Shown piece by piece: positions 2,091 through 24,900 of a stretch of DNA of 64,000 bases. Source of the stretch: Convolutriloba macropyga (lineage: Eukaryota); the NCBI RefSeq assembly GCF_964194025.1, contig NC_134470.1, positions 24,552,001-24,616,000 on the forward strand, written 5' to 3'. The translations under genes were made by a program, and so were the position numbers. Below the pieces are notes generated by a model that worked only from the letters and a program-made list of their open reading frames with translations, searched no databases and was not told the DNA's origin. Position 1 is the first letter of the stretch; every line of letters starts with the position of its first letter.

Positions 2091-2291
2091 TGGATCCTAA
2101 CAACGAAGCTCGGCGGTGTAATTTTGGTCATTTTGACCCCCCTACTAGAATTTTTGGGTCTTTTTATAAGTCGAGCTCTGGACTAGGGTAATAATGCCCG
2201 GAAGTGTAAGTCACAGTGGCACTGCAAGAAACACAATAAGCTCTGACCAAAATTCATTTGGGCGAAGAAGCCTCAAGATGCTTAATTTAAG

Positions 2292-5469: not shown

Positions 5470-6420
5470 GTCGAAAACAGATGGTTATCTCGCAAGATTC
5501 TGCCAGAATCTTGCAAAAACTGCCTATCTTGCAAGATCTGACAGAAAAATGGTTATCTTGCAAGGTCTGGCACAAAAATGGTTATCTTGCAAGATTCTTG
5601 CAAGTTCGTTCCGGTCGAGTTGTCCTCTTATTGGCTCTCATTCATGCAACACATTTCACTTCGACCAGAAATTTACTTAAGAATCAGTTGCGTGTTTTTT
5701 AAGAAAAAAATAAATTTTGAATAGATTTAAATCTGGAAATATTAATTATCTGAAGAAAACAAACTAAAATCTGCCTTTGAGAACTGTTAACACAAAATAA
5801 ATTACTATCAAAAATTATTTTCCTTCAACTTTATCAAGATTTACAAAACTACACGTCTATATTACCTTTTCTGATGAAAAAATTGTGTTATTATTCTTTG
5901 CATCTTAAACAGCTTTATTTCGTTTAATTTAGCTCCTTACGCTTAATTTTTCTTGCCAATGCCCAAAAAATTTGATGCTTAGATTAATACTTTTCTGATG
6001 TTTTTTTAATAATTGTCTTTCGATTTTTTGTCGATGCGCAAAATATGTGTGCATTCGAATATTGCAACCGTTTTAGCGTTTTCTTTCAAGTGTAAGGTCT
6101 TTTCAAGTGTAAGAAAGTTTTTTTTGCAAACGGCTATCTTGCAAGATTCTTGCAAAACGAACGGTTATCTTGTAAGATTCTGGCAGAACGAATGGTTATC
6201 TTGCAAGATTCTTGTAAAAAATGGTTATCTTGCAAGATCTTGCAAGATTCTGGCAGAAATTCTTGCAAGACGATGTATCGTCTTGTAAGATTCTGCCAGA
6301 TTCTGGCAAAATCTTGCAAGATAACCACTGGCAGAATCTTGCAAGACGATACATCGTCTTGCAAGATTCTGCCAGATTCTGGCAAAATCTTGCAAGATAA
6401 CCATTCAGATCCGGCTTGGG
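5467..6420. mobile_element. Non-autonomous DNA transposon (MITE) with ATCTTGCAAGAT subterminal palindrome arrays; EnSpm/CMC-like termini
   Basis: Left CCAGTCGAAAACAGATGGTTATCTCGCAAGA versus right TCTTGCAAGATAACCATTCAGATCCGGCTTGGG (imperfect TIR); many TCTTGCAAGA palindromes near both ends; AT-rich non-coding core. Confidence 0.75.
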
Positions 6421-7263: not shown

Positions 7264-7463
7264 NNNNNNNNNNNNNNNNNNNNNNNNNNNNNNNNNNNNN
7301 NNNNNNNNNNNNNNNNNNNNNNNNNNNNNNNNNNNNNNNNNNNNNNNNNNNNNNNNNNNNNNNNNNNNNNNNNNNNNNNNNNNNNNNNNNNNNNNNNNNN
7401 NNNNNNNNNNNNNNNNNNNNNNNNNNNNNNNNNNNNNNNNNNNNNNNNNNNNNNNNNNNNNNN
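7264..7463. other. Assembly gap
   Basis: 200 N. Confidence 1.
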
Positions 7464-7579
7464 ATGAGGTCTTAAGGTTTGATGTTAGATGTCAACGAAA
7501 AGCTCTTCATTGTTGGTGTTGTGATTTCTTGAATAAACTGGTTTTATTTTTCAAAAACGCTAGAACATTTTCAGTGGCA

Positions 7580-7855
7580 ATGCATCAAAGTAAAATTTAT
7601 GTTGATGAATCTGGAGTTCAATGTAAAAGAGACAACACTTTGAGTTCTGTTCCAAGAGAGAATGTAGCTGAGGCTGATAATCGCATCCAACGAGAACTAG
7701 TTGAGCTAAGGAAAAAGGTTGAAGAGTTATCCGAGCGCGTGAGAAAACTAGAGAATGCTGCTGTCGAGTTGGTTGACTTAACGAAAGATGAGAGTTTTGA
7801 CACCACAGTTTCTGTAAATTCTGACGATATAAGTCCAGTAGAGAATGGCATATGA
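7580..7855 (+). CDS. Small coiled-coil ORF or exon of unknown function
   Basis: Heptad pattern IQRELVELRKKVEELSERVRKLE followed by VELVDLT (SUMO-interacting-motif-like) and an acidic tail. Confidence 0.45.
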   Translation: MHQSKIYVDESGVQCKRDNTLSSVPRENVAEADNRIQRELVELRKKVEELSERVRKLENAAVELVDLTKDESFDTTVSVNSDDISPVENGI

Positions 7856-8170
7856 AAACAGTTTCATAAATTCTAGTGGCTATCCTTAATAGATTACAAT
7901 TAGGTATTCTCGTCGCTAACAAAAGCAAAGTTTTGAAATGTAATTTACTATTTCGTACTGTCTCTGGAGATTTGTTTCCTTTCGAATTGTAGTTGTCTGT
8001 ATTACAAAAGTTGATTGATGCTCTTGACCAGTTACTCAATTTTATTGTCCAGTTACTCAAAATAAAATTGTTGGTTTATAATTTTTCACCCTGACACCCA
8101 ACAAGTTACTGTTATGAACTGTTTTTTGCTTTTTGAAATGCAGGATCTGCTATCTTTCAGACCACCACAA

Positions 8171-9823
8171 ATGTCTTCCAATAAATGCCATTATTCGTGG
8201 CTGATCTTGTCAGAAAGAGAAGATGACGCGCGAATAATTGACAAAGAATCCGAGTTGTGGGATAGCGAGATGAGTCTTATGGATAAATTGGCCCAGAAAT
8301 AGGGACAACATGTGAATTTCAATGTTAATGGCAAGCAGGTGCCCTATATTATAGTCCAACAAGGTATCGAAAATTTCGAAGAAGACCTTAAAACATTGAA
8401 AGAGGAAATGAAAATCTCAGATGAGATTGTTTGCGTTGAAGAAAGTAATCAGGCAGACGCAGCAATTGACTGTCCACAGTCAACTCAGAAGGCGACTAGC
8501 AATACCACAGTTGCAGTTGCGGTATTTATAGTTCTTTTCCTTACTGAATCTAAGTTCTCTCTCTAACCGCAACACAGCGCTATTATTTTTCAAAATATTT
8601 CTAGGAGTCCTTAGTCAATATTCTTTTGTGTCATTTAAAGCATATGCATTAAGATCCCCTTAATTTGTGATTGGTTATTGGAAATATTTTTGAATGTTAG
8701 TCGAATCACGATAATTCAAAGAGCAGTCAACCTTTATTTTTTAGTGTTGCTCGGAGCATGAGAATCTTACAGAAGTTCTTCTGAAGAACGAAAAACGACT
8801 CAATGACGTTGTAGACTTGATGACCTTGACGACGACTCAAGCGGCTAGCGATCTCTTGACTTTGAAAAGAAAAATAACTACCATTGTAAGCATTAGAAAC
8901 TTTTGTGATCTAGCAAATTGACTTTTGTGACTATCTAGCAAATTACAGTTCGTAATTTCTATGCTACAAGCGTCGAATCAACGTTGAGTCTGTAATGCTT
9001 CAAAATTGTGATGAGTTTTTTGGCTAAGTGCTTTCTCTAGGTGAACTACGCCTTTAATTCAGTCGACGTCAATTGTGGAATGGAGGTTGAAGAGGTTGAA
9101 TCAATAGAGGAAGTAAATGCTGACTCCGATGAAAGCAATTTGTTCCTTCTGATAGAAGAGAAACCTCCCGTACAGTTTGGGATAAACAATCAAAACTTGG
9201 ATAATGTTTATCATGGACATTTGCCGGCTTCCTTTGGTGTTGCCTTGCGCAAGTGGATATGGGGAGTGAATGGACTAGCATTCGAAATGATTTTGCCGCT
9301 GAAAAGTATCGATGGTGGTCGCACATGTGCTTCGAAGGAGTCAATGCTCAAGTTTTTCCGTAAGTTTTTTTCCCAGAATAGAATTTTTTCATCGTTTTAA
9401 TTGGGTTGTCTTGAAAGTCTAAAAACTCTCAAATAGGTAGTTGCAAATTACACATCCCATCAATCCTTAGTTTTTATGTTTTGCATTCCCTGAGTTTTAT
9501 CATATCAAGCATTTCTGCCATTAGCTTAGTCCTTGACTGGTAATTTTCGTCAAAGCTTTTCCACGTTTTCGCACAATTGATTATATCAAGACTCCAGTTC
9601 AAAGTTTAGAAAAAGTTTGAAATGATGTGTAGGCTCTGTTCAACGAAAGTTCCCTTGCAAAAAATTCCCCGATGCCAGGGCCAAGGCTAAGAATGCAGCA
9701 AACAAAGCAGGGCTAAACGCACGCCAAAGAATTCATGGAACAGGAAAATACACTACTTTTGCAAAGACAAGTAAGAAAGGAGTCCAAGAGTCAAATAGAG
9801 GAAATGAGAAAGATCAAATTTAG
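8171..9823 (+). pseudogene. Accessory gene A: 4 exons (8171-8521, 8745-8885, 9041-9359, 9633-9823), ~333 aa, C-terminal BEN-like domain; one in-frame TAG at 8300-8302
   Basis: All three introns are GT-AG and frame-compatible; C-terminus SFGVALRKWIWG...KFF|RSVQRKFP...AKAKNAANKAGLNAR fits the BEN helical pattern. Confidence 0.7.
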
Positions 9824-10193
9824 AAGTGCGGCAAGAATGAGAAAGATTCTTCTTGCTCCTCAATCTTTTGATTGATTTTTTTAGTTATGTTAGATGACTT
9901 TGGTGATTCGTACTATTTTATCGATGCAATTGATAGCTGTTTTGAGCTGATAGATGGTAGTTGATTTATTTCGATAGTTGATTTATCAGCTAGTGTTATT
10001 TCGTTTGCTATCTGAGTGAATAACTAACAGCGTTTTGGCTTTTGTGTTAAAAGGTTTTATCTCAATGCTTTTCAGTTTACGTTCCTAGATATTGAGGCAA
10101 TAGTAGGAAGAACTATCAAGGTAAACCAATAAATTCGATAGTTTGTTATCTGAGTTTTTGAAAACATTTTTTGTCCCGACTTCAGAGCTAAAA

Positions 10194-11658
10194 ATGTCTC
10201 AAAAACATTTGACTCTGTCATCTGGACGAGTTGTTAGAGAGCCTGGGTTTGAAACTGAGCCTGAAGTAGCTGTTGAACGAAGTCTTCAACGAGAACACAG
10301 AGATACCAAGTTTCTGTTCAACTATTCTGATACATTGTTTTCATGCTCTTTAAATTGTGATAGCTGGCCAATTAATACGTCAACGGACTCGAAGCTGTCA
10401 TTAAAACCCGGAGAGAGGTGCGACATGTTCCACAGAGACAAAAAGAACCCAAAGAACTGTCTGTTTCTGGGGAGGGGTTCCTCCAAATCTGTTGCGCATC
10501 ATCAGAAAGTCACGTTGGCCAGGTTAAAGAAAGGACTTCCAGCGCAGTATGTACCGCAACCCTCTTTTTACCAACAGTCTAGTCAAATCAGTCACGTCTC
10601 AAATTCAAAAACTGTTTTGTCAGCATCTAGTGGCTCAGTTGCTGTAAAAATTTCTAAAGATGCCAGCAAGGCCCAAAGTGAGGCGAGCAAAACGCTACTG
10701 TTCCAAGACCCTGCTGTTTTAAAAACGAGCGAGCAAAGTATCACATCGGTACCACCGGCTAACAAATCTAGTGCTGCAGATTGCAAAAGTTTCCAAGAGT
10801 TTATGAAAAGTCACGAGCAACGAATGAAGCATGCCAGAGATATTGCGATAGAAATTAAGAGAAAAGGAGATAAGAGAAGACGATATCAACACAGAGAAGC
10901 AGAAGACATGGTTAGTTTTTGTCAGAAATTTTTTTGTTTGGAATAATCGTGAAACTACTGATCAGCTTTTTGTTTGTTTATATTGCCGAAAACTGCTCCT
11001 TGATGCTCTGTTAAACGTTGTAGGCAATAATATAGATACGCCAGAGTTTGTTTAGCTCGTTGACTTGAAGGAAGCATTCAGTCTCCAACAAAAAGGCTTT
11101 CAAAGCGTTGATGAGGACCCCTCGTTAATGGAAGCCTACCCATGCAAACAAGTTGAATTCAATGGGGAAGATCTCTGCAAAACTCTTCGAGCCGGGCCAC
11201 ATCCGTCAACTCTTGGAAGATGTTTGAGAAAGTCTTTGTTTGGTGAGGATGGCCTGACAAAGGACATGATTGAAAGCGACAACTCGCCATGTCGGGGAGA
11301 AGCGGAAGCTGGGCTAGCCAAACTTTTCGAGGGTTACAAAGATTTTTCCTCCTGATAGCTTTTAAGTCGAAGGCCGCAAATCTTTCATTCTGATCTGTTA
11401 AAATATAATTTCTCATTAAATATAAATCAAAGTGGTTATATCTAGGTTTTTTGTAGTGAAAAAATTCCTTTCAAAAATGAATCGAGTTTGTTTACAGAAG
11501 TGGTCAAACAGAAGTATCCCTGTACTCCTCGACTTGCCTACAAAAAGGCCAGGATGGCAGCCAATCAGGCAGGCTTAGAAAGACGGGCTTTTCTCAACCG
11601 GAGTGACGATCCAAGCAAACCAAATTTGGAAGCTGGTATTCGAAGCCCTGAGCTTTAA
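10194..11658 (+). pseudogene. Accessory gene B: exons ~10194-10910, ~11024-11332, 11498-11658, C-terminal BEN-like domain; lesion near the first junction
   Basis: STLGRCLRKSLFGEDGL...KLFE|EVVKQKYP...AYKKARMAANQAGLERR; phase-1 intron 11333-11497; phase mismatch and a TAG (11053) at the exon 1/2 junction. Confidence 0.65.
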
Positions 11659-12276
11659 AGAGACTCTTTTCGTAGACAGAAATGTTTAGCGTGTTCAAAG
11701 ACATAGTAAAACATATTTAGCGGCGGTAGTTTTATAGTTGTATTTTGACTTTGCGCAGCTTTGGCCGAAAACACTTATTTTTCAATTGCTTGAATGTGCC
11801 TTCGTTCTGCCTCTTCTTTGGCTTGAAGTGTTTATCTTGATCTCGTTTTTATCAAATCTTTGGCAGTTTTCATATTTTAGGAGTGCGTAGATTTTTAATG
11901 CAGTGCTATTTAAAATCAGTTTATCAGGTGTTTTGTATACGTTTAGTTTCTTTGTACTCAAGGATGTATAATGGTTTTTTCATTAAACCAAGCTTTTGCC
12001 GCAAAACTAGCCCTGAAAAAACTTGTAGTAACATGATAGTTGTACCTTTAAAATTTTTAATTCTTAAGGTAGTCTTAATTAGTTGTACTGTTGTTCTCCG
12101 GTCGTCTTTATCAAGTTAAATGCTGTATTGTTTTGTAACAAATGATAAATTTTTTGTTTTCCGTTGAATTCAAAAGTTAATCTGGTCTGAAACTTTTATC
12201 AGTCTACTGCTTTTTTCCTTTTTGATAGACAAAACGTGCGACCTACAGCCACACCAGCAGTTTTTCGTTTTTAGAT

Positions 12277-12957
12277 ATGAATATCTGTCAAATTTTGTGC
12301 CAAGTTGAAGACAGTGTTTCTAAGCGTTACATTCATGATACCAGTGTTGTTCCACATGCTCTAACCTCCTTGCTTTCGGACGAAGAATTAATACAGCACC
12401 AAAATAGTATTCGTGAATTTGGCAAGTTATACAACGATGTCGTTAAAATTTATACTGCATCTTTTGAAAGTGGTTTACGGACCGAGCCAGATAGCTTCGG
12501 TGGGTTTTGCCTTTTTAATCGTACTGGCCACACTATCAAATTGGGAGTTATTGAAAATACGGTTGGTCTGCTGGCAAAAGTGCCGAAGAACATTGAAATT
12601 GACGACTGGTCTATGATGGAAGGGGAGAAGCTAATGGTTGGCATTGCTAGGTGGGCTAATCACTCCTGCCGCCCGAACTGCGAATATTACATGAGTAGCG
12701 GGTACAATGGTCGGCCTTGTGTCAGGCTTCGTGCTCTGAAAGAAATTTTGAACGGCGATCAACTTCTCACTTTCTACGGTCCGGATTTTTTCGGCGATAG
12801 TAATGCTGACTGCCTCTGTGGGCACAATGATTTGCACGGAAAAATTGAGAGCACTCAAGAAACGTCATCAACAGACTTGACTCATAGTTCAGCAAAAAAA
12901 GCGAAGAAACGTAAAGCCTCGAATAAAAATTCAGAAAAACGTAAGTGTTTTGGATAG
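12277..12957 (+). CDS. SET-domain lysine methyltransferase, Suv4-20/KMT5B-C/Set9-like; probably the N-terminal part of the transposase ORF
   Basis: GIARWANHSCRPNC (NHSC at 12658-69), RALKEILNGDQLLTFYGPDFFGDSNADCLC, DWSMM and LCQVED resemble Suv4-20 [50 protein letters not shown] and LCENDD. Confidence 0.9.
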   Translation: MNICQILCQVEDSVSKRYIHDTSVVPHALTSLLSDEELIQHQNSIREFGKLYNDVVKIYTASFESGLRTEPDSFGGFCLFNRTGHTIKLGVIENTVGLLAKVPKNIEIDDWSMMEGEKLMVGIARWANHSCRPNCEYYMSSGYNGRPCVRLRALKEILNGDQLLTFYGPDFFGDSNADCLCGHNDLHGKIESTQETSSTDLTHSSAKKAKKRKASNKNSEKRKCFG

Positions 12958-15230
12958 TTTAATGAAATTTTATGACGAGTGCTCCAACACTAGTGTTTGC
13001 TCAGAAAGTTCAGAGTCAGCTGTTCTACAGAGTTTTGAGCCGCAATCATCTGATATTGAAGTCACTCATTTGCAAAATTTTGAAGATTCTTTCGAGATTT
13101 CTGATGAAAATACTGATGAAGACATTTTTGAAAGCAGTTTTGTTGAGAACCCTGTGTTCTTAAGCCACAGTAGCTCCTCTGGTTCACATCAAGAGACAGG
13201 TGATTTGGATTTTAGTAAAGAATATAGTGCCCAGCGTTTAAACCATGTGTCTGATGTTTCACCAGCTAATTTAGCGGCGTCGTTGATTGCTTTGATCACT
13301 AAATATAACGCTCCCGATTCTCTTCTGAAAGATTTGCTGAAAGGTGATCAAGCGCTATTTGGCGAAAGTGCGATATCTCCTTGGGCAGTACAAACGCAAT
13401 TGCAAAACTTTTCTAGCAATTATGTTTCACGTAAGCTAATTGTGCGTGAAGGCGAGATAATTCTCATAAAGTTTCGTTCTTTGTTGATGGAAATTGTTGT
13501 TAAATCAATTAACGAAATGTTATCTTACTCAAGAAGCAGAAGCAACACTGAGGATATTTTTATGCCTGAGCTAAAAGTAGTTGATGGAAAGGTGTCAATA
13601 CGGCTCATTTTAAATACCGACGGAGCGCTTGTTGCCAAGTCGCCTATATCTACTGCTTGGCCCCTGTTCATAGCTGTAGCTGATCTTCCTCCAAGAAAAA
13701 GACAGGCTTTCCAAAAATTAGTTCTGGGTTGTCTGTTTGTTGGTTCTGGCTATCCTGACTTCGATATCTTTTTTACCCACATTGAAGAAGAATTGTCAGT
13801 CCCGGAGTATTTTAATTTCGAAGGACAAAAGATATGTGTGATGTTCAAACCCATACTATTTATTGCCGACTTGATAGGAAAATCAAAAGTGCTCAAAATG
13901 AAAAGATGTAACGGCTTCTATGGGTGTACACAGAGAGGTGTTCACTATGCTGGTGTCCATAGATACTCACATAACAAAAAATTTGTCATGAGATCGTTTG
14001 AGTCGCATATGATTAACGTCCAGGAGTTGGAGAAGGGCGCCGATGACAAAATAAGATCCAAATTTGGGCGAAAAGCTGAGTGCGAAATTAGAACGCAAGT
14101 TCTAGAAAAAGCAAGAGTTCTAGGAAAAAGCAAAATTTTAGCCGTTATCCCAAATCAGCCTCTTTCTTCACCTATGGACCCAATGCATCAATTGTTTCTT
14201 GGGGTCGCAAAAGACTTATTTGGACATTTCTACGACAAAATGCCTTCCGTTCAGAAACGTGATTTGAATCACTTCTTGTCATCTATCAAGCTTCCCAGAG
14301 AACTGAAGAACTCTGTTAGATCCTTGGATTCGCTTAATACTTTCAAAGCCAAGGAGCTCAAGGTGTTTCTCTTTTACCTTTCACCAGTAATTTTTCCTCC
14401 ATTCTTGTTTGGCGAGGATAGAGGTAGTGACGAAAATGACCTCAAGAAGATAGTTTTTGCCACACGATTGTTGTTTGACACTTCGGAGCACGCAGACTTT
14501 TGTGACACTCTTTTGAACGATTTCTGCCGGAGCATGGCGGATAAAACGGAAAAAATGGACACAATCAATTTTCATATGCTGAGACACTTGAGTTGGCAAG
14601 TGAAAAATATCCGACCACTTTTCACTACTTCGGCAGCAATGTTCGAATCAACCAACAAATTATTGATTGCACCACTGACAGGAACAGTGAACCAATGCGA
14701 ATTGATGGTGTTGCGTTTCATACGAGCCAAATACGTAACAAAGATGAACGTTCAAGATGATTGCTTAACATCGACGATAAAAGATTTGGTCGAATTGACA
14801 AAGATTAATGAAGATTTATCATTTACTGAAAGCCAAGAAACTCGAGATTTTAGAGACCATCATCCTGAAGCTCAGCTCTTCTGTCGTTTTTTTTCAAAAT
14901 CATTACCTGACTTCCGTTGCCTACGGGCGCGGTTCAGACGCTGACAATTTTGTTGCTGCTGTTCTACATGATCAACTCTTCGTTGGAGAAATCCTCTTTT
15001 TTTTCAGAAATCCATCCACTGGATGTGTTCTACGGAAAATCGAAATATTGAAAAAACTAAAGCTAATGAAAACCGATTTCGCGGTAGAGGTCCCGTACGG
15101 ATTTATTGTTGGTGATGTGATCGAGACTATTGAAATTCCTGTGAGTGCTATTAAAACCAAACTTTTTAAATTTTTGTTTCAAGAAACTGTCTACTTGATT
15201 TCTTTGCTCAAGCATTATGAGCACAACTGA
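12950..15230 (+). CDS. EnSpm/CACTA-family DDE transposase, frameshifted at the T8 run 14887-14894 (ORFs 12950-14944 and 14808-15230)
   Basis: LNTDG (D 13619), WP...LPP..R, IADL (D 13868), NGFYGC, DPMHQLFLG, FKAKELK, NFHMLRHL, FES (E 14645), and C-terminal YLTSVAYGR...DNFV...VGEILFF. Confidence 0.9.
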
Positions 15231-15490
15231 GGTAGTTACTCTGCCGTTACCACCTTGAGTACTGATCAGATTTTTAGTTCATACGTTCTCTTATTGTTAA
15301 GTTCATAATGTTAAATCAAAAGCAGTTATGATCTTAGTTAGATTTGGAAAGATATTGTTAGATTTGATAAACAAATTTCAGGTCGTTTGCTTCATTATTA
15401 ATCTGTTTGTATTTTTCAACTAATTTTAAAAAGACTGTTCTAATCGTTTTCTATTGTTCAGTCAACCGTGACGTAAGATTTCATATTGCG

Positions 15491-15760
15491 NNNNNNNNNN
15501 NNNNNNNNNNNNNNNNNNNNNNNNNNNNNNNNNNNNNNNNNNNNNNNNNNNNNNNNNNNNNNNNNNNNNNNNNNNNNNNNNNNNNNNNNNNNNNNNNNNN
15601 NNNNNNNNNNNNNNNNNNNNNNNNNNNNNNNNNNNNNNNNNNNNNNNNNNNNNNNNNNNNNNNNNNNNNNNNNNNNNNNNNNNNNNNNNNNNNNNNNNNN
15701 NNNNNNNNNNNNNNNNNNNNNNNNNNNNNNNNNNNNNNNNNNNNNNNNNNNNNNNNNNNN
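15491..15760. other. Assembly gap
   Basis: 270 N. Confidence 1.
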
Positions 15761-16190
15761 TTCGGCTGAAAACAATTTTGCGTCTTTCTAGCAGGTGCTT
15801 TACTTGCTTCGGCTAAAATTCAATTTGCGTGTTCCTAGCAGGTGCTTTACCTGCTTCGGCGAGAAATAAGTTTGCGTGTTTTTTAGCAGGTGCTTTACCT
15901 GCTTCGGCGCAAAATAGTTCTCGGTGTATCTAGCAGGAGTTTTATCTGCTTCGACTAAAAATAATATTGCATGTTTATAGCAGGTGCTTTATCTGCTTCG
16001 GCTAAAAATAAGCTGGCGTGTTTTTTAGCAGGTGCTTCATCTGCTTCGTCAAAATATTTCGCGTGTTTTTAGCAGGTGCGTTAACTGCTTGGAGTTAAAA
16101 AATAAGTTTGCGTGTTTTTAGCGGGTGCTTTACCCGCTTCGGCTAAAATTTTTGCGTATTTCTAGCAGCTGCTTTAACTGCTTCGGCCAG
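15761..16190. repeat. Tandem array, ~45-bp unit containing the hairpin AGCAGGT-GCTTT-ACCTGCT
   Basis: About 9 copies of TAGCAGGTGCTTTACCTGCTTCGGC plus an AAAATAAGTTTGCGTGTTT-like linker. Confidence 0.9.
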
Positions 16191-17029
16191 AATTAAAATT
16201 AAATGTTCCAAATATAAAATTGCGTGTTTCTATTTATAGATCAATTGTCGATTTTTGAATTTGACTTGAGATTTTTCAGACACTACAGTTATTTTATCAC
16301 AATTTGCGCTCCTGTTTGTGTCTGTTGTGTGTTGCGTTTGGGTTGATCTTTGTGTCTTGTGGGTGTGTGTGTGCGTTTGTGTGTGTTTTGTTGCTAAGAT
16401 TTTTTTGGAGGTAGAGTTTGGGCCTTGTTTCTGTTGCTTTTTCTCTGTTCATTTCTCCTATAGTTGTTTGTTTGTTTGTTTGTCTAATTTTTGCTGTTTT
16501 TGTTGTTTAGATTTGTTTGGTGATTGAGTTTGAGCCTAGTATTTTTGCTCGTGCTCTGCTCATTTCTCCTATAGTTGTTCGTTTGTAACTCCGCCATAGC
16601 CGGTCCCCAGCCCGGATGAGAAAAGGAGGAGGGAAACACACTCATAATATACTGGAAAGATCTCAAATTTTGGTGTTTTGAAATCGACTTGAGATTATTC
16701 CGACAGTACATTGGCTCTTTTATGACTACTTCTCACAAAATGCCCTTTTTTCTGCGCTTGCTCGTTTTTCGTTCGTTCGCTTTCATGCTCGTTCGTTTTC
16801 GTTTTGCTCTCGCTCGCTTTTCGTTCGTTCGCTTTCACGCTTGTTCGGTTTGGTTACGCTCATTTTGCGGTCGCTCGCTTTTCGCTCGTTCGTTTTCACG
16901 CTCCTTCGCTCGTTTTGCGCTCGCTCATTTTTCGTCGTGGCGCTCGCCTTTTGTGCGAACCCCCACCTTATTTCTGTGCCCCCATTCTTGTGCTTTTAGA
17001 TGTACATTTATTTGTTTGCCTGTTTGTTT

Positions 17030-17240
17030 CTTCAGCGCAATAACCCCCCGCCCTTGTTTGTGACCCCTTCGCGCAGCACAATTACCCCCTGCCCTCTCTG
17101 TGCCCCCTTTGTTGTGCATTTAGATGTTCATTTATATGTTTGTCTGTTTCTTTCTTCAGCGCGATAACCCCCCGCCCTTGTTTGTGACCCCTTCGCTCAG
17201 CGCGATAACCCCCCGCCCTTGTTTGTGACCCCTTCGCGCA
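17030..17240. repeat. 40-bp minisatellite (CAGCGCGATAACCCCCCGCCCTTGTTTGTGACCCCTTCGC)
   Basis: Three clear copies plus one degenerate copy. Confidence 0.85.
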
Positions 17241-17404
17241 TTAGTCTTAGCTATTTAGGGTCTTTGTTTTTTCTTTGGCGGCTATAAAGTCAGGTGCGCT
17301 CCCTATGGAGCCGAGTAATGCACCGGCTCTAGTCTTCAAAGAAGCAAAAAGGCCCATGCAAAAGCTAAGACATGTTTACTGCTGCAAAAATCTGAACAGT
17401 TTCT

Positions 17405-18600
17405 TTGATCAGACTCAAGTGCGCTCGAAACGGCCTCTGATCAGACTCAAATGCGCTCGAAACGTCCTCTGATCAGACTCAAGTGCGCTCGAAACGGCCT
17501 CCGTTCTGCGCTCGCTCGCTTTTCGTTCGTTCGTTTTCACGCTCGTTCGTTTTCGTTTTGCTCTCGCTCGCTTTTCGTTCGTTCGCTTTCACGCTCGTCC
17601 GGTTTGGTTACGCTCATTTTGCGGTCGCTCGCTTTTCGCTCGTTCGTTTTCACGCTCATTTGTTTTTTTTCGCTCGTTTTGCGCTCGCTCGTTGATCAAA
17701 ATCAAGTGCTCTCGAATCGTCCTCTGATCAGACTCAAGTGCGCTCGAAAGGGCCTCTGATCAGACTCAAGTGCGCTCGAAACGGCCTCTGATCAGTCTCA
17801 TATGCGCTCGAAACGTCCTCTGATCAGACTCAAGTGCGCTCGAAACGGCCTCCGTTCTGCGCTCGCTCGCTTTTCGTTCGTTCGTTTTCACGCTCGTTCG
17901 TTTTCGTTTTGCTCTCGCTCGCTTTTCGCTCGTTCGTTTTCACGCTCATTTGTTTTTTTTCGCTCGTTTTGCGCTCGCTCGTTGATCAAAATCAAGTGCT
18001 CTCGAATCGTCCTCTGATCAGACTCAAGTGCGCTCGAAACGGCCTCTGATCAGACTCAAATGCGCTCGAAACGTCCTCTGATCAGACTCAAGTGCGCTCG
18101 AAACGGCCTCCGTTCTGCGCTCGCTCGCTTTTCGTTCGTTCGTTTTCACGCTCGTTCGTTTTCGTTTTGCTCTCGCTCGCTTTTCGCTCGTTCGTTTTCA
18201 CGCTCATTTGTTTTTTTTCGCTCGTTTTGCGCTCGCTCGTTGATCAAAATCAAGTGCTCTCGAATCGTCCTCTGATCAGACTCAAGTGCGCTCGAAAGGG
18301 CCTCTGATCAGACTCAAGTGCGCTCGAAACGGCCTCTGATCAGTCTCATATGCGCTCGAAACGTCCTCTGATCAGACTCAAGTGCGCTCGAAACGACCTC
18401 TGATCAGACTCAAGTGCGCTCGAAACGCCCCCTGATCAGACTCAAGTGCGCTCGAAATGGCCTCTGATCAGACTCAAGTGCGCTCGAAACGCCCCCTGAT
18501 CAGACTCAAGTGCGCTCGAAACGGCCTCTGATCAGACTCAAGTGCGCTCGAAACGACCTCTGATCAGACTCAAGTGCGCTCGAAACGTCCTCTGATCAGA
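17405..18600. repeat. 32-bp tandem repeat (TCTGATCAGACTCAAGTGCGCTCGAAACGGCC) interleaved with TTCG/CTCG-rich blocks in a 258-bp higher-order unit
   Basis: Identical ORF translations at 17802/18060 and near-identical ones at 17834/18092 (period 258); a related TTCG block lies at ~16755-16945. Confidence 0.95.
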
Positions 18601-19029
18601 CCGAACCCAGACCATGGTCCAGACTAAAGAGACTATAATCAGACCTTCCAGACCGAATTGACCCCTGATCAGACCGAACCCAGACCATGGTCCAGACTAA
18701 AGAGACTATGATCAGACCTTCCAGACCGAATTGACTTCTGATCAGACCGAACCCAGACCATGGTCCAGACTAAAGAGACTATGATCAGACCTTCCAGACC
18801 AAATTGACCTCTGATCAGACCGAACCCAGACCATGGTCCAGACTAAAGAGACTATGATCAGACCGTCCAGACCGAATTGACCTCTGATCAGACCGAAATC
18901 AGACCATGGTCCAGACTATTGTGCGCTCGAACCGCTTTCCAGACCCTGTAATTTCGGTCTGGGAACACAGGGGTGTGCGCTCGATTGGGTCTGATCATAG
19001 CTCAATTTGGGTCTGGACCAAAACCTGGG
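18590..19029. repeat. 73-bp tandem repeat sharing the TCTGATCAGA palindrome, ending in a candidate transposon terminus CCTGGG
   Basis: Period 73 (18601 versus 18674), about 4.5 copies; inverted copies of the motif near 18955-19020; abrupt end at GGG 19029. Confidence 0.85.
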
Positions 19030-19389
19030 TTGTAATCATCATCAAATTTTTATTTACTTTCGGCGTTGACTTTTGATAGAAAGTTTAGTGGTATTGGGCT
19101 GTTTTGTATGTGTTTCTGCATCAGTCATAGGACTTTTAGATCTAAAAACTTTTTTTTTACTTAACAGTGGGGACAAAAGCCCGATAAAGGTTCTCCTGTG
19201 TGCACGTTTTTAATGATCAATGCGAGTCAAGATCTCAAAATGTATTACTTGTTGATTGTTGAATGGAAAAAACGAGGTGCTTGATTACTTCTCTGCAAAG
19301 AAGAGATTATGGCAATACATAACGACAATATTATCAACTGGGTTTGCTGATTTTTCCTTGCTCATAACAATTTTTGTATTTTCCCCATC

Positions 19390-19880
19390 TTTTGTATAGT
19401 GTTGTTGGAGAACGTCATTGACTCTGTTGGTTTGGCGTCTCGAGTCTACATAGACAATTCATTGCTGTCAAGCACTATTTTCTCTGCTCCGGTCTTTTTG
19501 GTGCACACGTTTCCCGAAGCCACCATCACATACATTTCCTCATTTCCTATTGTAAATTTCTGATTCGTCTCTACTATCAATTGTGTCTTATTGAAAAATT
19601 TAGCAAAAAAGTTATCCTCATTGTACTAAAAGTTTTAGACGAATTGGCGGACGTATTTTGAAGATTCAAGGGTGGTTGGTTATGTCTCGCTTTGAGCAAC
19701 TTGATTTTAATTATTCATAACTTTTTGGGGCTAGCATTTTCTGAATTATGATGCACCTTCTCAAAAAGATAACTAAGGTTGTAAATGAGACAATTCATTG
19801 TTAAGGCTTGGCTGGACTTTTTGTGATCAATATTCCGTGGCTGCCCAAAATTTGCGAATAACGATATTCATCACAGAAAA
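19390..19880. repeat. Diverged ~500-bp direct duplication, copy 1 (copy 2 at ~20405-20900)
   Basis: Shared blocks TGGTTTGGCGTCT, TACATTTCCTCATTTCCTATTGTAAA and GGTTGGTTATGTCTC. Confidence 0.8.
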
Positions 19881-19922
19881 GTACGTGTATTTGCAATTCC
19901 AGCACGGTGAGGTCTTAACAAA

Positions 19923-20322
19923 TAGACGTACTAAAATGTAGAAATTTCAACGAATGTGATTGGTTGAGAAATTTAAAACACTGTACTGTTAAGTGTTCAA
20001 TTAGCCTAAATTGGACATAGTCTAATGCTAGATTATAATTTTTACCCCATCTGGCCATGCCTCGCGGGCCATGGCTATGCCTCAGCAGCCCGTGGGACTT
20101 GATATGAATCTATCACAACCGAACGTGAGACCAGTTTTCCCCAAAAAAAGTATAATTTTGCTTTTTCGGCTTATCGCAATTTCTGAGCAATTTTACGTTA
20201 ACGCGCATATCCTATTTTAAAACATGGAGAATTTGTTGAGCAATCAGCCAATCAGAAAACAATATTCCCATTTTCTCGATTGTGATTGGCCAGCAATAAA
20301 ATTTCTATTTTTTGGTACGTCT
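19923..20322. mobile_element. MITE with ~23-bp TIRs
   Basis: AGACGTACTAAAATGTAGAAATTT ... AAATTTCTATTTTTTGGTACGTCT; internal GATTGG/CCAATC motifs. Confidence 0.65.
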
Positions 20323-21907
20323 GCCATTTTCACTAGCGCCTTGATGAATCTTCCGCTCGGCTGTTCTGTATTGTGTGACAGTTCATGATTTCTGTTTTTC
20401 TTAATCTTGTGAATCGTGTTGTTTGACAATGTCTTTGATTCCTTTGGTTTGGCGTCTGGAGTTGACAAAAAAAATATTATTGTCATGCAGATTTTGATCT
20501 GCTCTTGTTCTCTTTCGGTGCACACGCTTCTCAAATTCATCATTATATACATTTCCTCATTTCCTATTGTAAACGTCTGATCCGTCAGTCCTATCAGTTG
20601 TGTCCAATATATTGAGATTTGTAACAACAGTTAACGTCATAGGACGATTTAATTTGGAGTTTAATTTAGTATAGCGATCGTGTTTACAATAGTTTTCAAG
20701 TTTCAGGTGGGGTTGGTTATGTCTCACTTTTATCTACAACTGTGATCTAAAATATGGTTAAAACTGTTTTGAACCTTCAATTTTATTTTAGGTTTACGAC
20801 GCACTTTCCTAGAGTGATTTTATGGCTACAATCGAGACAAAAATTTCTTAAGGCTGGCCTTCAATTTTTGTGGTCAATATTTATTGGTTGTCAATACTTG
20901 CAATATTGATTTATTCGTTTGCGTATATTCACCGCAGTAAAATATCGTTTCCTTGCGGAGCGAGTACGGGCAATTTAATTGATGAAACTTCCACTCGGCG
21001 CTGGGGTATTCTGTACAGGTTGTGAAAATGACAAACGAACTCGATGCTGATTACCATTTCATAGGAAGCTTTGTAGGATCCAACTATTCTCCTAACAACT
21101 CTCGTTGTATATCCCCGTCGTTCACTAATGCTATACAAACGTGTTTTACCTTACAGTATTCAGCCAGTTTTTTTAAGCTTCCAAAAAAAATTGCACCACA
21201 GAACTGAGGAGTTATAATGATACAGCTCTTTGATCATCCAATTTCTCTGCCTTATCTTGAAAAAGTATACCTTGCGCTTCATTTTTAAGACATTTTTTTA
21301 GGCATGCGTTGTTCAATTGATTATTGCGTGGCTTACCTTCACATTCTGCTTGTGCAGTAGAGTTAAAAAGTTGCTCTTATATTGGTTCGGCGAGTACTAC
21401 CATTGAGAAGTGTAGTGATAGAAATTCCCTCTATTGCAAAATATTCAACTACACTCGCTGAGCGAAATTTGTCTTTGAATGGGAATTAAGAAATGCTATT
21501 TCAACTTTAAAATCCACGTCTTGACCTAAAAACTAGGAGAATGAATACTCAGGGATTGCGATCGCTGAACAAATGAACAAATTATGCTATACCTGAAATA
21601 ATGCTAAACAACAGAAGTTTTATTGATAATCAATCAATTTTGAACTAAATATAACTCAAAAACGCGGGGTGAATGTGCTTCCACAGTAGAAGGAGATAGC
21701 AATTTCGTAGGGGCGTTTGTTTAATTTAACAGAAGGGAAGTGATCAGAGTGAGACCAACATTAAACATGTGCGTGTATGTTTTCGCGTATACCATATGCA
21801 AGAGCATGCCACAAAACCAAATGCTATACAAAATTGTTTTGCTTTATGCTTCGTAATGTCCTAAACATTACTTCTGAGGAAAACTTTGTCATTATTTGTT
21901 GCTCCAG

Positions 21908-24900
21908 ATAAGCATATCAAGCAGTACCACATCGTCATCTGAGCAGGGTTCCACTCCTGCAGAGCTTGATCTGAACTCACATTCGGATAACTTGACTGAC
22001 GCCACTTCCTACTACTTCACTCAACCCTTCATAGAGACAGCAGATGTTAGTTCCAAACATCTAGAGGTCAAGCTGAGTGAGGAGGAGTTACTGGGCTACA
22101 GTGGGAGAGAGTACACCATCAAAGAGTTGCTCATGAATGTGTCTTTCTGGGTCTCCCTTCTTGTGCTCTGCTGTCATGAATACGTTCTGATTATCATCAG
22201 TAATTATTACAAGGTAAGAAAGCGAATGATCTGGTATAACTGGAATATATCAAACTTGAACCAAATCCAGTATTAAAAATATTTTGTGTTAAAGGCTGTT
22301 TTCAATTTAAACGAATCCGGTTACAAACTGTTACAAAGGGTAACAAGGCTGTTGAAATTAAGAAGCATAGGTTAAATACTTACAAGAATACAATGGGGGT
22401 GTCCAATATATTATAATTAGTTCATTAATAGTATTTTTGTCGTTGCAGCGTATTCTACCCTTGAAAAGCCATTGCGCTCTTGGTAACATCACGGGGCATG
22501 AAAAATAGAGGCACCTATTTTCATTGGTTAGAGGCCTTCCCTTGCAGAGCAATGCACTCTAGGAAGATCTCTACTGTCTTTAACCCATCCAGTTCATTTC
22601 AAATATTACATGTTAACAAAAATCAAATAGCAAAACATCAATACTTAATTCCGCTTAATCATAAGAGAACAACATGGAACTTGTTAATCTGTAAGGAGTT
22701 TAACGAGTTCTTTTAAGGAGTTTTTCAAAGGTTCTGGACAATATTTTTTACTGAATTTTTACAGCTTCTATCCCAGGCCTCCTTTAGTCGACATATTATT
22801 TTCAAATGAGAGTTTGGACGTATCATATAATAGAATCTGAATTCACTAAACTCTTTGCAAGTCATTATTGTGTTATGTTCAGACATATGGTCAAACGTTC
22901 ATCAGTGATGATTCGTTTCTGTCTCTTGTTGGGTCTATATGCAGTGTGGCCAATGCACTCGGCAGATTATCATGGGGACTAGTCATGGACTTCTCCAGTT
23001 TCAAGGTTACCAATATACAGACATATTTTGGTAATGAATTGCTCATAACGCCACAGATATACAAGACGAGAATTGACTGATGATTATTATGCCTTGCAAT
23101 ATTTCGGTTACCTTGAGCATGACAAAATAGGCTTCATCATTTGTATGTAGTTTCCATATAGTTGTTCCGACCCCCACTTTAATGGGAAGGAAGGACCTAT
23201 ATACTCAAATGGGTTTTTTTGTTCAGCCATTTTTGGCCGATTGATATATTCATCGCGGAGCTTTATGAGTGATATCATTAAAAAGCACGTATATCCTAGA
23301 CTATGGAATTAAATTTTTTTTCGAATTTCGTTTTTTACAGGGAATAATAGGGGATTAAAATTTTGTGAATATTCGACAGTTTTTGTTCACATCTTCGGTA
23401 ACCTTTGCTAAAGTTCGGTTCAATTTAAAATAAGTTAAAAAGTTTTAAGTTTGAATTTTATTGTTGCCGTTAGACATAGAAGAGCGTTGCAGAATTGTTT
23501 GATTCAATATTTTCCTGGGTAAAAATTTTGAAAGCATTTTTAAAATTCAGACAATTTACATAGAAAAATTGCACGAAATGTGACTTTTTGGTCAACTTTG
23601 TTTATTTTTGCGGCAATAGGAGACGTAGAAACCACTGAAAAATCTTCGTAAACTCCAAAAGAAAGCTAGTTGAAATCTCGCGCTCTATAAAATCTTCTGG
23701 CTTTAAAGTTTTACCGTTTTTTGCAAATTTAAATCGATAATTATACAAAATGCACGATCCTTTTTTCATTTTTGAAATAATTCACTTAACATTTGTTCTG
23801 GTTGGCAAACATTTGAAACACTTAGGTGGTTAGGTGGTTTGTAGAACGCGCAAAAATCAGCCATAAATTCGATATCATCATGGATTCTTACAATAATAAA
23901 ATTTTAATTTTTTTGGTGCAGCTTTCTTCTCCAAAATAGTTCGCATTTATTATGTTTTCAATGTTAATTACTGTCAAAAAGTTTATTTCACGCCTCCATT
24001 TAAGACAACTCCCATGTACTTAGTAATGAGGTCAAACGTAAAAATGGTATGATTTCAGAGAACCTAATGGTTTTTATGGTTTTGAAGAAGAGTTAGTAAT
24101 CTTCAACTGAATTGTTGTGTTTTGCCTTCACTTGTTAATCCTTTTGCAGTCTTATTACTAATTCGAACCAATCAAAGATTCAAATGGCTTCTTCAGGAGG
24201 TGTAGACTAACCATTACAATTCATTTGGGTGTTATTCAATGTCTTTTATGGCATCGAATATTTTTTTAAAAGAAAACTTCATTGATTTTTTGAACTTGTC
24301 ATTTTTTATAATATTTCTGCCAACTTTTAGTTCATTCTGAGTAAAAGCAGGTCACATTTTTTTAAATGAGATAAATATTTTTGTTTGTGATGATTTTATT
24401 TTAAAAGTCGGCTTCTCGGTAAAAGAACTGTGAGTTTTCTTTCAAGAGTTTGTTATTTTTGTGCACAATTGCCCCTTTTGCTGTTCTTTTTCCTTCTTTG
24501 TTAATTGTTGCATCACTTAACAATCCGACTGAAAAATTTGCTGCAGAATTTGCACTCTAATATATTTACTGTTTTTTAGCTTTGGTTTTTAAGGGCTGCA
24601 ACACCGTTCTCTTGCAGAAATTGTAGTAGATTTTTTTCCTGTATTTGTTGCTTGTTTTTGTTTTCGTACACCCAAAATTGGGTAAAAAAATCTCAATAGC
24701 AACTATAGATATTAAAATGATTTTTATAACTGATATCGGTAAATAACTAATGGCTTTATTGACTTTCAAAACATTTTTTTTTTTTTCAAAAATTAAAGGT
24801 ATTCTTCAATTTAGCTCTTTTTGTTCTGATTTTCGTCTTCTGTCATGCTTTATGTTGGCCATGAGTTTTGAAAGTATTTACTTTCAATAAAGACAAGGAA

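What the first reader, a model, noticed from the sequence alone, without database searches (positions are those of the whole stretch)
12277..15230. Suv4-20-like H4K20 methyltransferase fused to a CACTA/EnSpm transposase
Seen: the SET ORF overlaps the transposase ORF. The transposase frame is open from 12881, and deleting one A from the A7 run (12894-12900) reads ...SAKKRRNVKPRIKIQKNVSVLDSLMKFY... (NLS-like) into it. Deleting one T from T8 (14887-14894) adds the typical C-terminus, giving one 983-aa SET-acidic linker-DDE protein with no introns required. Established: the SET motifs are those of the Suv4-20/KMT5B-C/Set9 family (H4K20me2/3). The known SET-transposase fusion SETMAR is a domesticated mariner gene with a different SET class. 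H4K20me2 recruits 53BP1/Crb2, and H4K20me3 marks heterochromatin. Inference: a mobile element carrying its own histone writer on the transposase, which could mark its ends or target sites, bias repair of excision breaks toward end joining, or regulate its own silencing. I do not know of a described CMC element with this fusion but cannot exclude one.
Basis: partly seen in the sequence, partly recalled or inferred. Interest (0 to 1): 0.95.

Follow-up and report, generated by a model that had tools for sequence, protein, structure and literature searches.

The report
Jumping gene with built-in histone methyltransferase
This is a broken copy of a DNA transposon whose cutting enzyme naturally begins with a Suv4-20-like histone-methyltransferase domain; the same fusion is intact in many diverged copies, so mobile elements have kept a chromatin-writing part on their transposase for a long time.

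Summary
Observation confirmed. The window holds three consecutive ORFs: SET 12277-12957, transposase 12950-14944 and a C-terminal part 14808-15230. They are separated only by +1 slips in an A7 run (12894) and a T8 run (14887).

A 98%-identical copy (L001) and contigs of independent sequencing runs carry A6 and T7. Diverged copies encode uninterrupted 982-1108-aa SET-linker-transposase proteins.

The SET part matches KMT5/Suv4-20/Set9 best by sequence profile and by predicted fold. Its catalytic motifs are invariant among copies only 37-69% identical.

The transposase part belongs to the CMC/"CMCT" group. Its relatives pass the Pfam thresholds for DUF1258 and Transposase_21. It has an invariant D-D-C(2)C-H(3)H-E signature, and among solved structures its predicted fold is closest to the RAG1 core.

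On a transposase tree, all 16 SET-bearing sequences fall in one supported clade, which fits a single old fusion.

The window copy is dead. It has two frameshifts, a 9-nt deletion that removes an invariant Cys, and a 15-nt insertion.

The element is larger than the finding, at least about 7.5-19.0 kb. It includes a co-conserved upstream gene, tandem arrays and a 3' end shared by five copies. I did not find the 5' end, TIRs or TSD.

The biochemical role of the SET part is inferred, not shown. The scan had already noted this fusion on other DNA of this genome. Transposon-borne SET genes are known as separate accessory genes. I found no paper describing this in-frame fusion.

The parts
12277..12957 (+). 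N-terminal Suv4-20/KMT5-like SET domain ORF: helical N-domain, SET core and a CxCxH post-SET motif, followed by a basic KKRR/KPRIK NLS-like motif in the ancestral frame
   Evidence: Pfam SET 4e-10. PDB phmmer best hits are SUV420H2/H1. Family profile versus KMT5B 6e-16. Fold matches. Invariant NHxC, YY, FY..FFG and CxC among copies 37-69% identical.
12894..12900 (+). A7 homopolymer with one extra A relative to related copies (frameshift 1, which separates the SET frame from the transposase frame)
   Evidence: One A is left out in L001 and in contigs of runs X1, X2 and X4. P0001 reads through.
12896..14944 (+). Acidic/Ser-rich linker plus CMC-type DDE transposase core (NTDG, ADL, CxxC remnant, D-P-M-H, H(3)H, FES)
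   Evidence: 22 homologues. (11,859 representative proteins at E<=1e-3). Relatives pass DUF1258/Transposase_21 cut-offs. Invariant residues. Fold closest to RAG1 core.
13919..13930 (+). Site of a 9-nt deletion (after 13924) that removes one Cys of the invariant C(2)C motif, so this copy's transposase would be defective even with the frames restored
   Evidence: 9 nt present in L001 and the run contigs. (C553 and C556 are present in 77/77 sequences). (the window reads ..GFYGCTQRG..).
14100..14114 (+). 15-nt in-frame insertion (LEKAR) specific to the window copy
14887..14894 (+). T8 homopolymer with one extra T (frameshift 2)
   Evidence: One T is left out in L001 and in contigs of X2 and X5. 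tblastn changes frame here.
14904..15230 (+). C-terminal beta-rich domain of the transposase, ending ..HYEHN as in the intact relatives
   Evidence: Aligns to P0003 877-984 and P0002 729-837. Beta domain in the model.
7574..11658 (+). Co-conserved upstream multi-exon gene(s) with two paralogous domains (motif LRK..WG.DGL..EM); function unknown
   Evidence: Collinear tblastx with L002 5662-9305 and L003 8487-10874. Alignment A3. No Pfam, PDB or Atlas match.
15761..18918 (+). Internal and subterminal tandem arrays (47/95-bp, 32-bp TGATCAGAC-type, 73-bp). 32-bp arrays occupy the same position in diverged copies.
   Evidence: Homologous arrays in L001, L005 and L002.
19015..19030 (+). 3' end of the element (...AACCTGGGT). 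Similarity to other copies stops here and the flanks differ.
   Evidence: window, L001, L005, L002. L006.

Best explanation
Window 12277-15230 is the inactivated transposase gene of a large autonomous DNA transposon of the CMC/CMCT group (DUF1258/Transposase_21 branch).

Shown: in this lineage the native transposase is one polypeptide of about 985 aa. It consists of an N-terminal Suv4-20/KMT5-like SET domain, a basic NLS-like motif, a fast-evolving acidic linker, a DDE core with C(2)C and H(3)H motifs (RAG1-like fold), and a C-terminal beta domain. The fusion arose once and has been kept under purifying selection through deep divergence. The window copy is a pseudogene.

Inferred: the transposase carries the SET domain to the nucleosomes at the transposon ends or the target and methylates a histone tail there, most probably H4K20. 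My preferred reading (about 0.3) is that this biases repair of the RAG/hAT-like breaks toward 53BP1-dependent end joining, or helps hold the complex on chromatin. That would favour survival of the donor and target chromosomes, and so of the element.
For: Intact fused ORFs occur in diverged copies: P0003 (984 aa), P0018 (995 aa), P0023, P0025, P0028, P0029, P0035, P0039, P0044 and P0060, each with Pfam SET plus DUF1258/Transposase_21. P0035 occurs as four full-length 1035-aa members on different contigs.

A near-identical copy and independent runs carry A6 and T7.

SET catalytic motifs are invariant. Between P0003 and P0006, dN is 0.20 for SET, 0.17 for the transposase and 0.58 for the linker, with dS saturated.

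KMT5 is the best match by profile and by fold.

D451, D534, C553/C556, H767/H771 and E791 are invariant in 77 sequences. This matches the CMCT signature described in PMC12730594. The fold is closest to the RAG1 core, BbRAGL and Transib.

On the transposase tree, all 16 SET-bearing rows lie in one clade (SH-aLRT 95), with 43 SET-less rows outside. One apparently SET-less row inside the clade, P0033, has a frameshifted SET upstream.

Evidence for mobility: clusters of 50-107 near-identical member sequences; five copies share a 3' end with unrelated flanks; and the scan noted other copies in this genome.
Against: I found no 5' end, TIR or TSD, so the element's limits and mobility are not fully shown. 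The 3' end ...CCTGGG(T) is not the usual CA..TG/CACTA terminus.

No RNA evidence was obtained: the runs were of unknown kind and showed no joints.

The window ORF itself is below the Pfam Transposase_21 cut-off.

The SET model has only moderate confidence (pLDDT 68). The post-SET motif is CxCxH rather than the CxCxxC of KMT5. No phylogeny was made against host KMT5 or other SET classes.

Substrate, product and biological role are entirely inferred.
Confidence: 0.8

Rival explanations
1. The SET ORF and the transposase ORF are two separate genes: an accessory SET gene with its own stop, or one joined elsewhere by splicing at the GTAAGT at 12941. On this reading the apparent fusion is an accident of two homopolymers.
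For: In the window as assembled, the SET ORF ends at 12957 and overlaps the next ORF. Transposon-borne SET genes elsewhere are separate accessory genes (PMC12730594; 10.1101/2025.02.11.637652).
Against: More than ten diverged lineages have one uninterrupted ORF across the junction. The basic junction motif KRKR..KPRIK is conserved in frame. A6 is found in L001 and in three runs. GTAAGT is not conserved in P0003.
Confidence: 0.03
2. The fusion is a domesticated host gene family, analogous to SETMAR, and no longer part of a mobile element.
For: No TIR or TSD was found. There is strong purifying selection on both domains.
Against: There are many copies per assembly, in all states of decay: frameshifts, stops, deletions and truncated ORFs. 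Several deeply diverged lineages coexist in one assembly (L001-L006, L008). Five copies share a 3' end with unrelated flanks. The catalytic DDE, C(2)C and H(3)H residues are all retained.
Confidence: 0.07
3. The SET domain works mainly as a chromatin anchor that binds the H4 tail and nucleosome, tethering or targeting the transposase. Alternatively it methylates a non-histone substrate such as the transposase itself or a repair factor, rather than writing H4K20me2/3.
For: SETMAR automethylates and has disputed histone activity (papers listed). The post-SET Zn motif differs from KMT5. Identity to KMT5 is only 20-25%.
Against: The NHxC and Tyr catalytic motifs are invariant across the clade. A pure binding module would not need them.
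Confidence: 0.25
4. The window copy is really intact, and the A7 and T8 runs are homopolymer errors of the assembly.
For: Both breaks lie in homopolymers. Every other source examined has A6 and T7.
Against: The same copy also differs by a 9-nt deletion that removes an invariant Cys, a 15-nt insertion and 45 substitutions. It is therefore a distinct and already damaged copy whatever the homopolymer lengths are. No run holding the window's exact sequence was available: the share of words was 0.72.
Confidence: 0.15

Closest known systems
SETMAR (Metnase), primate SET-mariner fusion
   Same: One polypeptide with an N-terminal SET lysine-methyltransferase domain and a C-terminal DDE/DDD transposase domain.
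   Different: SETMAR is a single-copy host gene, made when an Hsmar1 copy was captured downstream of an existing SET gene and joined to it by splicing. Its SET is of a different class and its transposase is Tc1/mariner and partly inactive. Here the fusion is intronless, sits inside multi-copy elements, has a KMT5-like SET and a CMC-type transposase with all catalytic residues kept, and defines an old clade.
Transposons with SET accessory genes (HarbingerS and MuDR of Phytophthora; Helitrons; Plavaka PAG2 of the red alga Bostrychia)
   Same: Mobile elements that carry a SET-domain protein, presumably to act on chromatin (PMC12730594; 10.1101/2025.02.11.637652).
   Different: In those elements the SET protein is a separate accessory gene, as those papers describe it. 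Here it is the N-terminus of the transposase itself and is of the Suv4-20/KMT5 type.
CMC / CMCT DNA transposons (EnSpm/CACTA, Mirage, Chapaev, Transib, Plavaka)
   Same: [quoted passage not shown]
   Different: An N-terminal SET domain is present. The 3' end is ...CCTGGG(T) rather than CA..TG/CACTA. TIRs and TSD were not found. Internal satellite arrays of several kb are present.
KMT5B/KMT5C (SUV420H1/2), Set9, Suv4-20
   Same: Best sequence and fold match, including the helical N-domain; NHxC..PNC and FY(G/N)..FFG..N..C.C motifs.
   Different: About 20-25% identity. Post-SET motif is CxCxH, not CxCxxC. No long C-terminal tail. Fused to a transposase. Activity untested.
RAG1 / Transib / ProtoRAG transposases
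   Same: Closest solved folds to the transposase part (E about 1e-10, TM about 0.5 over roughly 600 columns). Same D-D-C(2)C-H(3-4)H-E layout.
   Different: No detectable sequence similarity by profile against PDB. No RAG2-like partner was seen.

Membership tests
KMT5 / Suv4-20 / Set9 histone H4K20 methyltransferases | SET fold with NHxC SAM-pocket motif and catalytic Tyr (ELxxFY) | tested here: met
   Pfam SET 4e-10. N128, H129, C131 and Y167 are invariant in 10 diverged copies including the window.
KMT5 / Suv4-20 / Set9 histone H4K20 methyltransferases | Closer to KMT5 than to any other SET class, by sequence and by structure | tested here: met
   Profile: KMT5B 6e-16 (61.7 bits, positions 24-188) against NSD2 2e-9. 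Foldseek PDB top 15 are all SUV420H1/2 (TM 0.5-0.6), then MLL at TM 0.35. Swiss-Prot top 24 are all KMT5B/C, Set9 or Suv4-20.
KMT5 / Suv4-20 / Set9 histone H4K20 methyltransferases | Helical N-domain directly preceding the SET core | tested here: met
   The model has helices 3-18, 35-44 and 46-64 before the beta core. Foldseek alignments cover query residues 1-215. Model confidence is only moderate (pLDDT 68).
KMT5 / Suv4-20 / Set9 histone H4K20 methyltransferases | Post-SET zinc motif CxCxxC after FYG..FFG..N | tested here: inconclusive
   FY(G/N)..FFG..N and CxC are conserved, but the next ligand position is His (CxCxH...H) instead of CxCxxC.
KMT5 / Suv4-20 / Set9 histone H4K20 methyltransferases | Placement inside the KMT5 clade in a phylogeny of SET domains that includes the host's own KMT5 | not tested
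KMT5 / Suv4-20 / Set9 histone H4K20 methyltransferases | H4K20me1 to me2/me3 activity on nucleosomes | not testable with these tools
   Needs biochemistry.
CMC / CMCT DNA transposases (EnSpm/CACTA-Mirage-Chapaev-Transib group) | DDE catalytic triad | tested here: met
   D451 (74/74 non-gap), D534 (77/77) and E791 (77/77) in P0003 numbering. All three motifs are present in the window ORF.
CMC / CMCT DNA transposases (EnSpm/CACTA-Mirage-Chapaev-Transib group) | [quoted passage not shown] | tested here: met
   C553-x2-C556 and H767-x3-H771 are invariant in 77 sequences. Definition read. The window copy has lost one Cys through its 9-nt deletion.
CMC / CMCT DNA transposases (EnSpm/CACTA-Mirage-Chapaev-Transib group) | Match to Pfam Transposase_21 / DUF1258 above the curated threshold | tested here: inconclusive
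   The window ORF scores 13.2 bits against a cut-off of 28.6. SET-bearing relative P0028 scores 42 bits on Transposase_21, and P0035 and P0029 score 51 and 45 bits on DUF1258. SET-less relatives also pass. These relatives match the family profile at E<1e-50.
CMC / CMCT DNA transposases (EnSpm/CACTA-Mirage-Chapaev-Transib group) | Termini 5'-CA..TG-3' (CACTA in EnSpm) with terminal inverted repeats | tested here: not met
   The 3' end shared by five copies is ...AACCTGGG(T). No inverted partner was found within 10 kb upstream in any locus. The 5' end may lie beyond the fetched DNA or in the N gap.
CMC / CMCT DNA transposases (EnSpm/CACTA-Mirage-Chapaev-Transib group) | Target-site duplication of 2-5 bp | tested here: inconclusive
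   It cannot be read without the 5' end. The 3' flanks differ among copies.
SETMAR-type domesticated fusion | Single-copy host gene; mariner transposase; SET joined by splicing | tested here: not met
   The family is multi-copy and decaying, the transposase is CMC-type, and the ORF is intronless.
Transposons with a separate SET accessory gene (HarbingerS, MuDR, Plavaka PAG2) | SET protein encoded by its own gene beside the transposase gene | tested here: not met
   Here the SET is the N-terminus of the transposase ORF.

The most novel reading that the evidence does not exclude
A clade of active, RAG1-like (CMC-type) transposases carries its own H4K20 writer. On this reading the transpososome deposits H4K20 methylation on the nucleosomes beside the breaks it makes and so recruits 53BP1-type end joining. 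The element would be programming the repair-pathway choice of its own excision and integration. This would be a natural, transposon-encoded counterpart of what SETMAR is proposed to do, and of the 53BP1 dependence of V(D)J joining.
Probability: 0.25. Interest if true: 0.85.

Novelty: new variant of a known kind. Interest (0 to 1): 0.68.

Why it matters
Transposons that carry chromatin or DNA modifiers (VANDAL anti-silencers, TET/JBP, SET accessory genes) are an emerging theme. SETMAR is the textbook SET-transposase fusion, but it is a domesticated, largely transposition-dead host gene.

Here the same architecture exists inside elements that look autonomous. It uses a different SET class (KMT5-like) and a different transposase group (CMC, with a RAG1-like fold). 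It has been kept under selection through deep divergence.

That gives a natural system, with intact copies available, for asking what a histone writer physically coupled to a transposase does to targeting, break repair or silencing. It may also be useful as a fused cut-and-mark tool.

For genome annotation, these ORFs risk being labelled as host 'SET domain-containing' or KMT5-like genes. At least one UniProt entry with this fold is so named.

Tried and rejected
(1) Search for TIR, TSD and the 5' end. I tried a pattern search with the reverse complement of the 3' end, CACTA-anchored and seed-based inverted-repeat scans in the window and eight loci, and a comparison of two copies of one subfamily, L002 and L006. 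Only the 3' end could be fixed. Upstream, the copies run into kb-long 174-bp satellite arrays or contig ends. The window has an N gap at 7264-7463, which I left unfilled.

(2) A CACTA terminus. L001 reads ..GGGTAGTG, but the window, L005 and L002 do not, so I rejected it as chance.

Pfam found no BEN at E<=10, PDB profile search found nothing at E<=10, and the Atlas search found nothing. The exons were tested only as separate pieces, so this is neither supported nor excluded.

(4) RNA evidence. The second run search returned the same four runs of unknown kind. Laying them showed no joints.

(5) dN/dS. dS is saturated between subfamilies, so only dN contrasts are usable.

(6) Whether the nearest SET-less outgroup truly lacks SET upstream. 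L011 has only 526 bp upstream and P0077 returned no DNA, so this is unresolved.

(7) A profile of the transposase against PDB sequences found nothing. Only the fold search linked it to RAG1/Transib.

(8) One look-up (P0005) failed for lack of a free slot.
Full report
**What is in the window**

One search lists three consecutive + strand ORFs: 12277-12957 (226 aa), 12950-14944 (664 aa) and 14808-15230 (140 aa). In the sequence, the second frame is open from 12881, right after a TGA. An A7 run lies at 12894-12900 and a T8 run at 14887-14894.

tblastn with intact relatives changes frame exactly at these two runs. P0003 residues 1-196 align to 12277-12864, residues 204-871 to 12896-14887, and residues 877-984 to 14904-15227.

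**The fusion is real**

A protein search with the 664-aa ORF found 22 relatives.

P0003 (984 aa, 54% identical) and P0018 (995 aa, 36% identical, from an NCBI assembly) are uninterrupted from the SET domain to a C-terminus ending ..HYEHN / ..HFEHD. The window's third ORF ends the same way.

A global alignment of the window with the locus of P0001 (L001) shows 45 substitutions and four indels:
- one A fewer at 12894;
- 9 nt more after 13924;
- 15 nt fewer at 14100-14114;
- one T fewer at 14887.

Contigs of independent public runs of the same organism show the same four states at depths of about 100-170. A related organism's run also shows the T7 state.

So the ancestral state is one continuous frame, and the window carries a damaged copy. 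The 9-nt deletion removes one Cys of a CxxC pair that is invariant in 77 family members. The copy would therefore be defective even if the two homopolymer slips were assembly errors. L001 is itself broken by a TAA at the position matching window ~14524.

The GTAAGT at 12941 codes for N-V-S-V in the transposase frame and is not conserved in P0003. No joints were seen in the laid contigs.

**The SET part**

- Pfam SET scores E 4e-10.
- A profile of ten copies (A2) scores KMT5B/SUV420H1 at 6e-16 over profile positions 24-188. That stretch includes the region before the SET core. The next family, NSD2, reaches 2e-9 over the C-terminal half only.
- An AlphaFold model (pLDDT 68) has three N-terminal helices followed by the SET beta core.
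- The 15 best PDB matches of that model are all SUV420H1/H2 (E 4e-8 to 4e-6, TM 0.5-0.6). The next group, MLL, has TM 0.35.
- Its 24 best Swiss-Prot matches are all KMT5B, KMT5C, Set9 or Suv4-20.
- Among copies only 37-69% identical, the NHxC..PNC, YY, FY..FFG and CxC positions are invariant.
- Between P0003 and P0006, dN is 0.20 in SET, 0.17 in the transposase core and 0.58 in the linker, with dS saturated.

The SET domain is therefore as constrained as the transposase. One departure from KMT5 is the post-SET motif, CxCxH...H instead of CxCxxC.

A conserved basic motif (KRKR..KPRIK) follows the SET domain. After it comes an acidic, Ser-rich linker that evolves fast.

**The transposase part**

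The window ORF gives only a sub-threshold Transposase_21 hit (E 0.05). A profile of the family (A1) finds 11,859 representative proteins at E<=1e-3 and 938 at E<=1e-30 in 1.84 billion.

SET-less relatives of 700-950 aa pass the curated Pfam cut-offs for DUF1258 and Transposase_21, with weaker DUF4218 and Plavaka hits. SET-bearing relatives pass them too: P0028 scores 42 bits on Transposase_21, and P0035 scores 51 bits on DUF1258. The ESM Atlas neighbours carry Transposase_21, DUF1258 and Plavaka.

In an alignment of 77 sequences, these residues are invariant (P0003 numbering):
- D451 (NTDG)
- D534 (ADL)
- C553-x2-C556
- D635-x-M-H638
- H767-x3-H771
- E791 (FES)

This is the D-D-C(2)C-H(3-4)H-E layout that Kojima (PMC12730594, read) gives as the shared signature of EnSpm, Mirage, Chapaev, Transib, Plavaka and RAG1.

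Consistent with that, the AlphaFold model (pLDDT 77) is closest among solved structures to the RAG1 core (E about 1e-10, TM about 0.5 over roughly 600 columns), then to amphioxus RAG-like and Transib transposases. In AlphaFold DB clusters it matches uncharacterised 'DUF4218' and 'Transposase' proteins at TM 0.6-0.78, plus one entry auto-named 'SET domain-containing protein'.

'CMC-type' is supported. 'CACTA/EnSpm' in the narrow sense is not shown.

**One origin of the fusion**

A family-specific SET HMM finds an N-terminal SET in 18 of the 150 best representative clusters. Nine of these were confirmed with Pfam.

On a maximum-likelihood tree of the transposase domain (64 rows), all 16 SET-bearing rows lie in one clade of 21 rows (SH-aLRT 95). 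The other 43 rows lie outside it. Of the five 'SET-less' rows inside the clade, P0033 has a frameshifted SET just upstream of its called ORF, and P0022 abuts a contig end. So at least some of these rows are artefacts of decay or truncation.

The clade occurs in at least three ENA assemblies, one NCBI assembly and several Logan runs. Deeply diverged lineages coexist in one assembly.

Caveat: I could not check the upstream DNA of the nearest outgroup rows.

**The element around it**

Translated comparison shows collinear similarity between window ~7574-15242 and L002 5662-12967. This includes an upstream multi-exon gene with two paralogous domains (A3). In L003 the same gene lies downstream of the SET-transposase gene.

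Downstream come tandem arrays. Among them are 32-bp arrays with a TGATCAGAC core, which recur at the same position in L001, L005 and, with a different unit, L002.

Similarity among the window, L001, L005, L002 and L006 ends at ...AACCTGGG(T), which is window 19030. Beyond that point the flanks are unrelated. This marks a 3' end and separate insertions.

In L002, L004, L005 and L006 the genes are flanked by 174-bp satellite arrays several kb long. In L002 the downstream array lies inside the element, before the 3' end.

I could not find the 5' end, a terminal inverted repeat or a target-site duplication. The window has an N gap at 7264-7463 just upstream of the conserved part, and I did not fill it.

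The upstream gene has no Pfam, PDB or Atlas match when tested exon by exon.

**How it probably works**

Shown: the architecture, the conservation of both catalytic centres, the multi-copy and decaying nature of the family, and the shared end.

Inferred: the transposase brings a KMT5-like writer to the nucleosomes at its ends or target. From established knowledge, KMT5B/C make H4K20me2/3, H4K20me2 is bound by 53BP1/Crb2, and RAG/hAT/Transib-type enzymes leave breaks that need end joining.

My preferred reading (about 0.3) is local H4K20 methylation that favours end-joining repair and/or retention on chromatin. Alternatives are a non-catalytic nucleosome anchor, a non-histone substrate, or control of the element's own chromatin state. 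None of these is tested.

**Comparison with what is known, and novelty**

SETMAR shares the SET-transposase layout. It differs in being a single-copy domesticated gene with a different SET class and a mariner transposase.

SET genes carried by transposons are known in HarbingerS and MuDR of Phytophthora (PMC12730594), in Helitrons, and in Plavaka elements of a red alga (10.1101/2025.02.11.637652). In those cases they are separate accessory genes.

Six full-text searches found no description of a KMT5-like SET fused in frame to a CMC-type transposase. Repbase Reports are not in the library, so prior description there cannot be excluded.

The scan itself had already noted the same fusion on other DNA of this genome: s1-198632 (followed up), s1-208210, s1-234587 and s1-240937. 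It had also noted the larger element on this stretch, as s1-237295 and s1-237283.

I rate it a new variant of a known kind, with interest 0.68.

Noticed in passing
L002:1947-5508 and 13238-17507; L004:1-5903 and 13205-22700; L005:580-8644; L006:1-5104 and 12626-17915: Arrays of a 174-bp (348/358-bp higher-order) satellite, several kb long, flank the gene pair in several copies. In L002 the downstream array lies inside the element, before the shared 3' end. These transposons may seed or spread satellite DNA.
   Followed up: partly
window 17406-18601 (32-bp units) and 18589-18918 (73-bp units); L005:14965-15529; L002:18175-18448: Subterminal 32-bp tandem arrays sit at the same position near the 3' end in diverged subfamilies, but with diverged unit sequences. 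They are candidate binding sites for the element's own DNA-binding protein.
   Followed up: partly
window 7574-11658; L002:5662-9362; L003:8073-10943: A second, intron-containing gene is co-conserved with the SET-transposase gene. It has two paralogous domains (LRK..WG.DGL..EM, followed in the next exon by VV.QKYP.TP..A...A..AANQAGRE). It lies upstream in the window and L002 but downstream in L003. It matches no known family when tested exon by exon.
   Followed up: partly
transposase model of P0003:320-984 (equivalent to window 13240-15230): Among solved structures, the predicted fold is closest to the RAG1 core (TM about 0.5, E about 1e-10). It has the same C(2)C and H(3)H zinc-motif positions, although a sequence profile finds nothing in PDB.
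   Followed up: yes
window 1-2091: An 86-bp tandem repeat with about 24 copies at 88% identity lies at the window's start. It is unrelated to the arrays of the element.
   Followed up: no
window 5481-6406: A dense cluster of short palindromic and inverted repeats built on TCTTGCAAGA / TTCTGCCAGAATC motifs lies upstream of the N gap. Whether it belongs to the element is unknown.
   Followed up: no
window 52209-52910 (- strand): An ORF with a sub-threshold reverse-transcriptase (RVT_1) match, probably a decayed retroelement fragment.
   Followed up: no
L006:19019 and 20681: Two places in L006 align to the 3' terminal region of L002. This suggests a duplicated or nested 3' end in that copy.
   Followed up: no
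window 11002: Run contigs that match the window at about 99% from 11002 onward diverge completely upstream of it (a loose end in X1, X2 and X4). The near-identical copy in those individuals therefore differs structurally inside the upstream gene.
   Followed up: no
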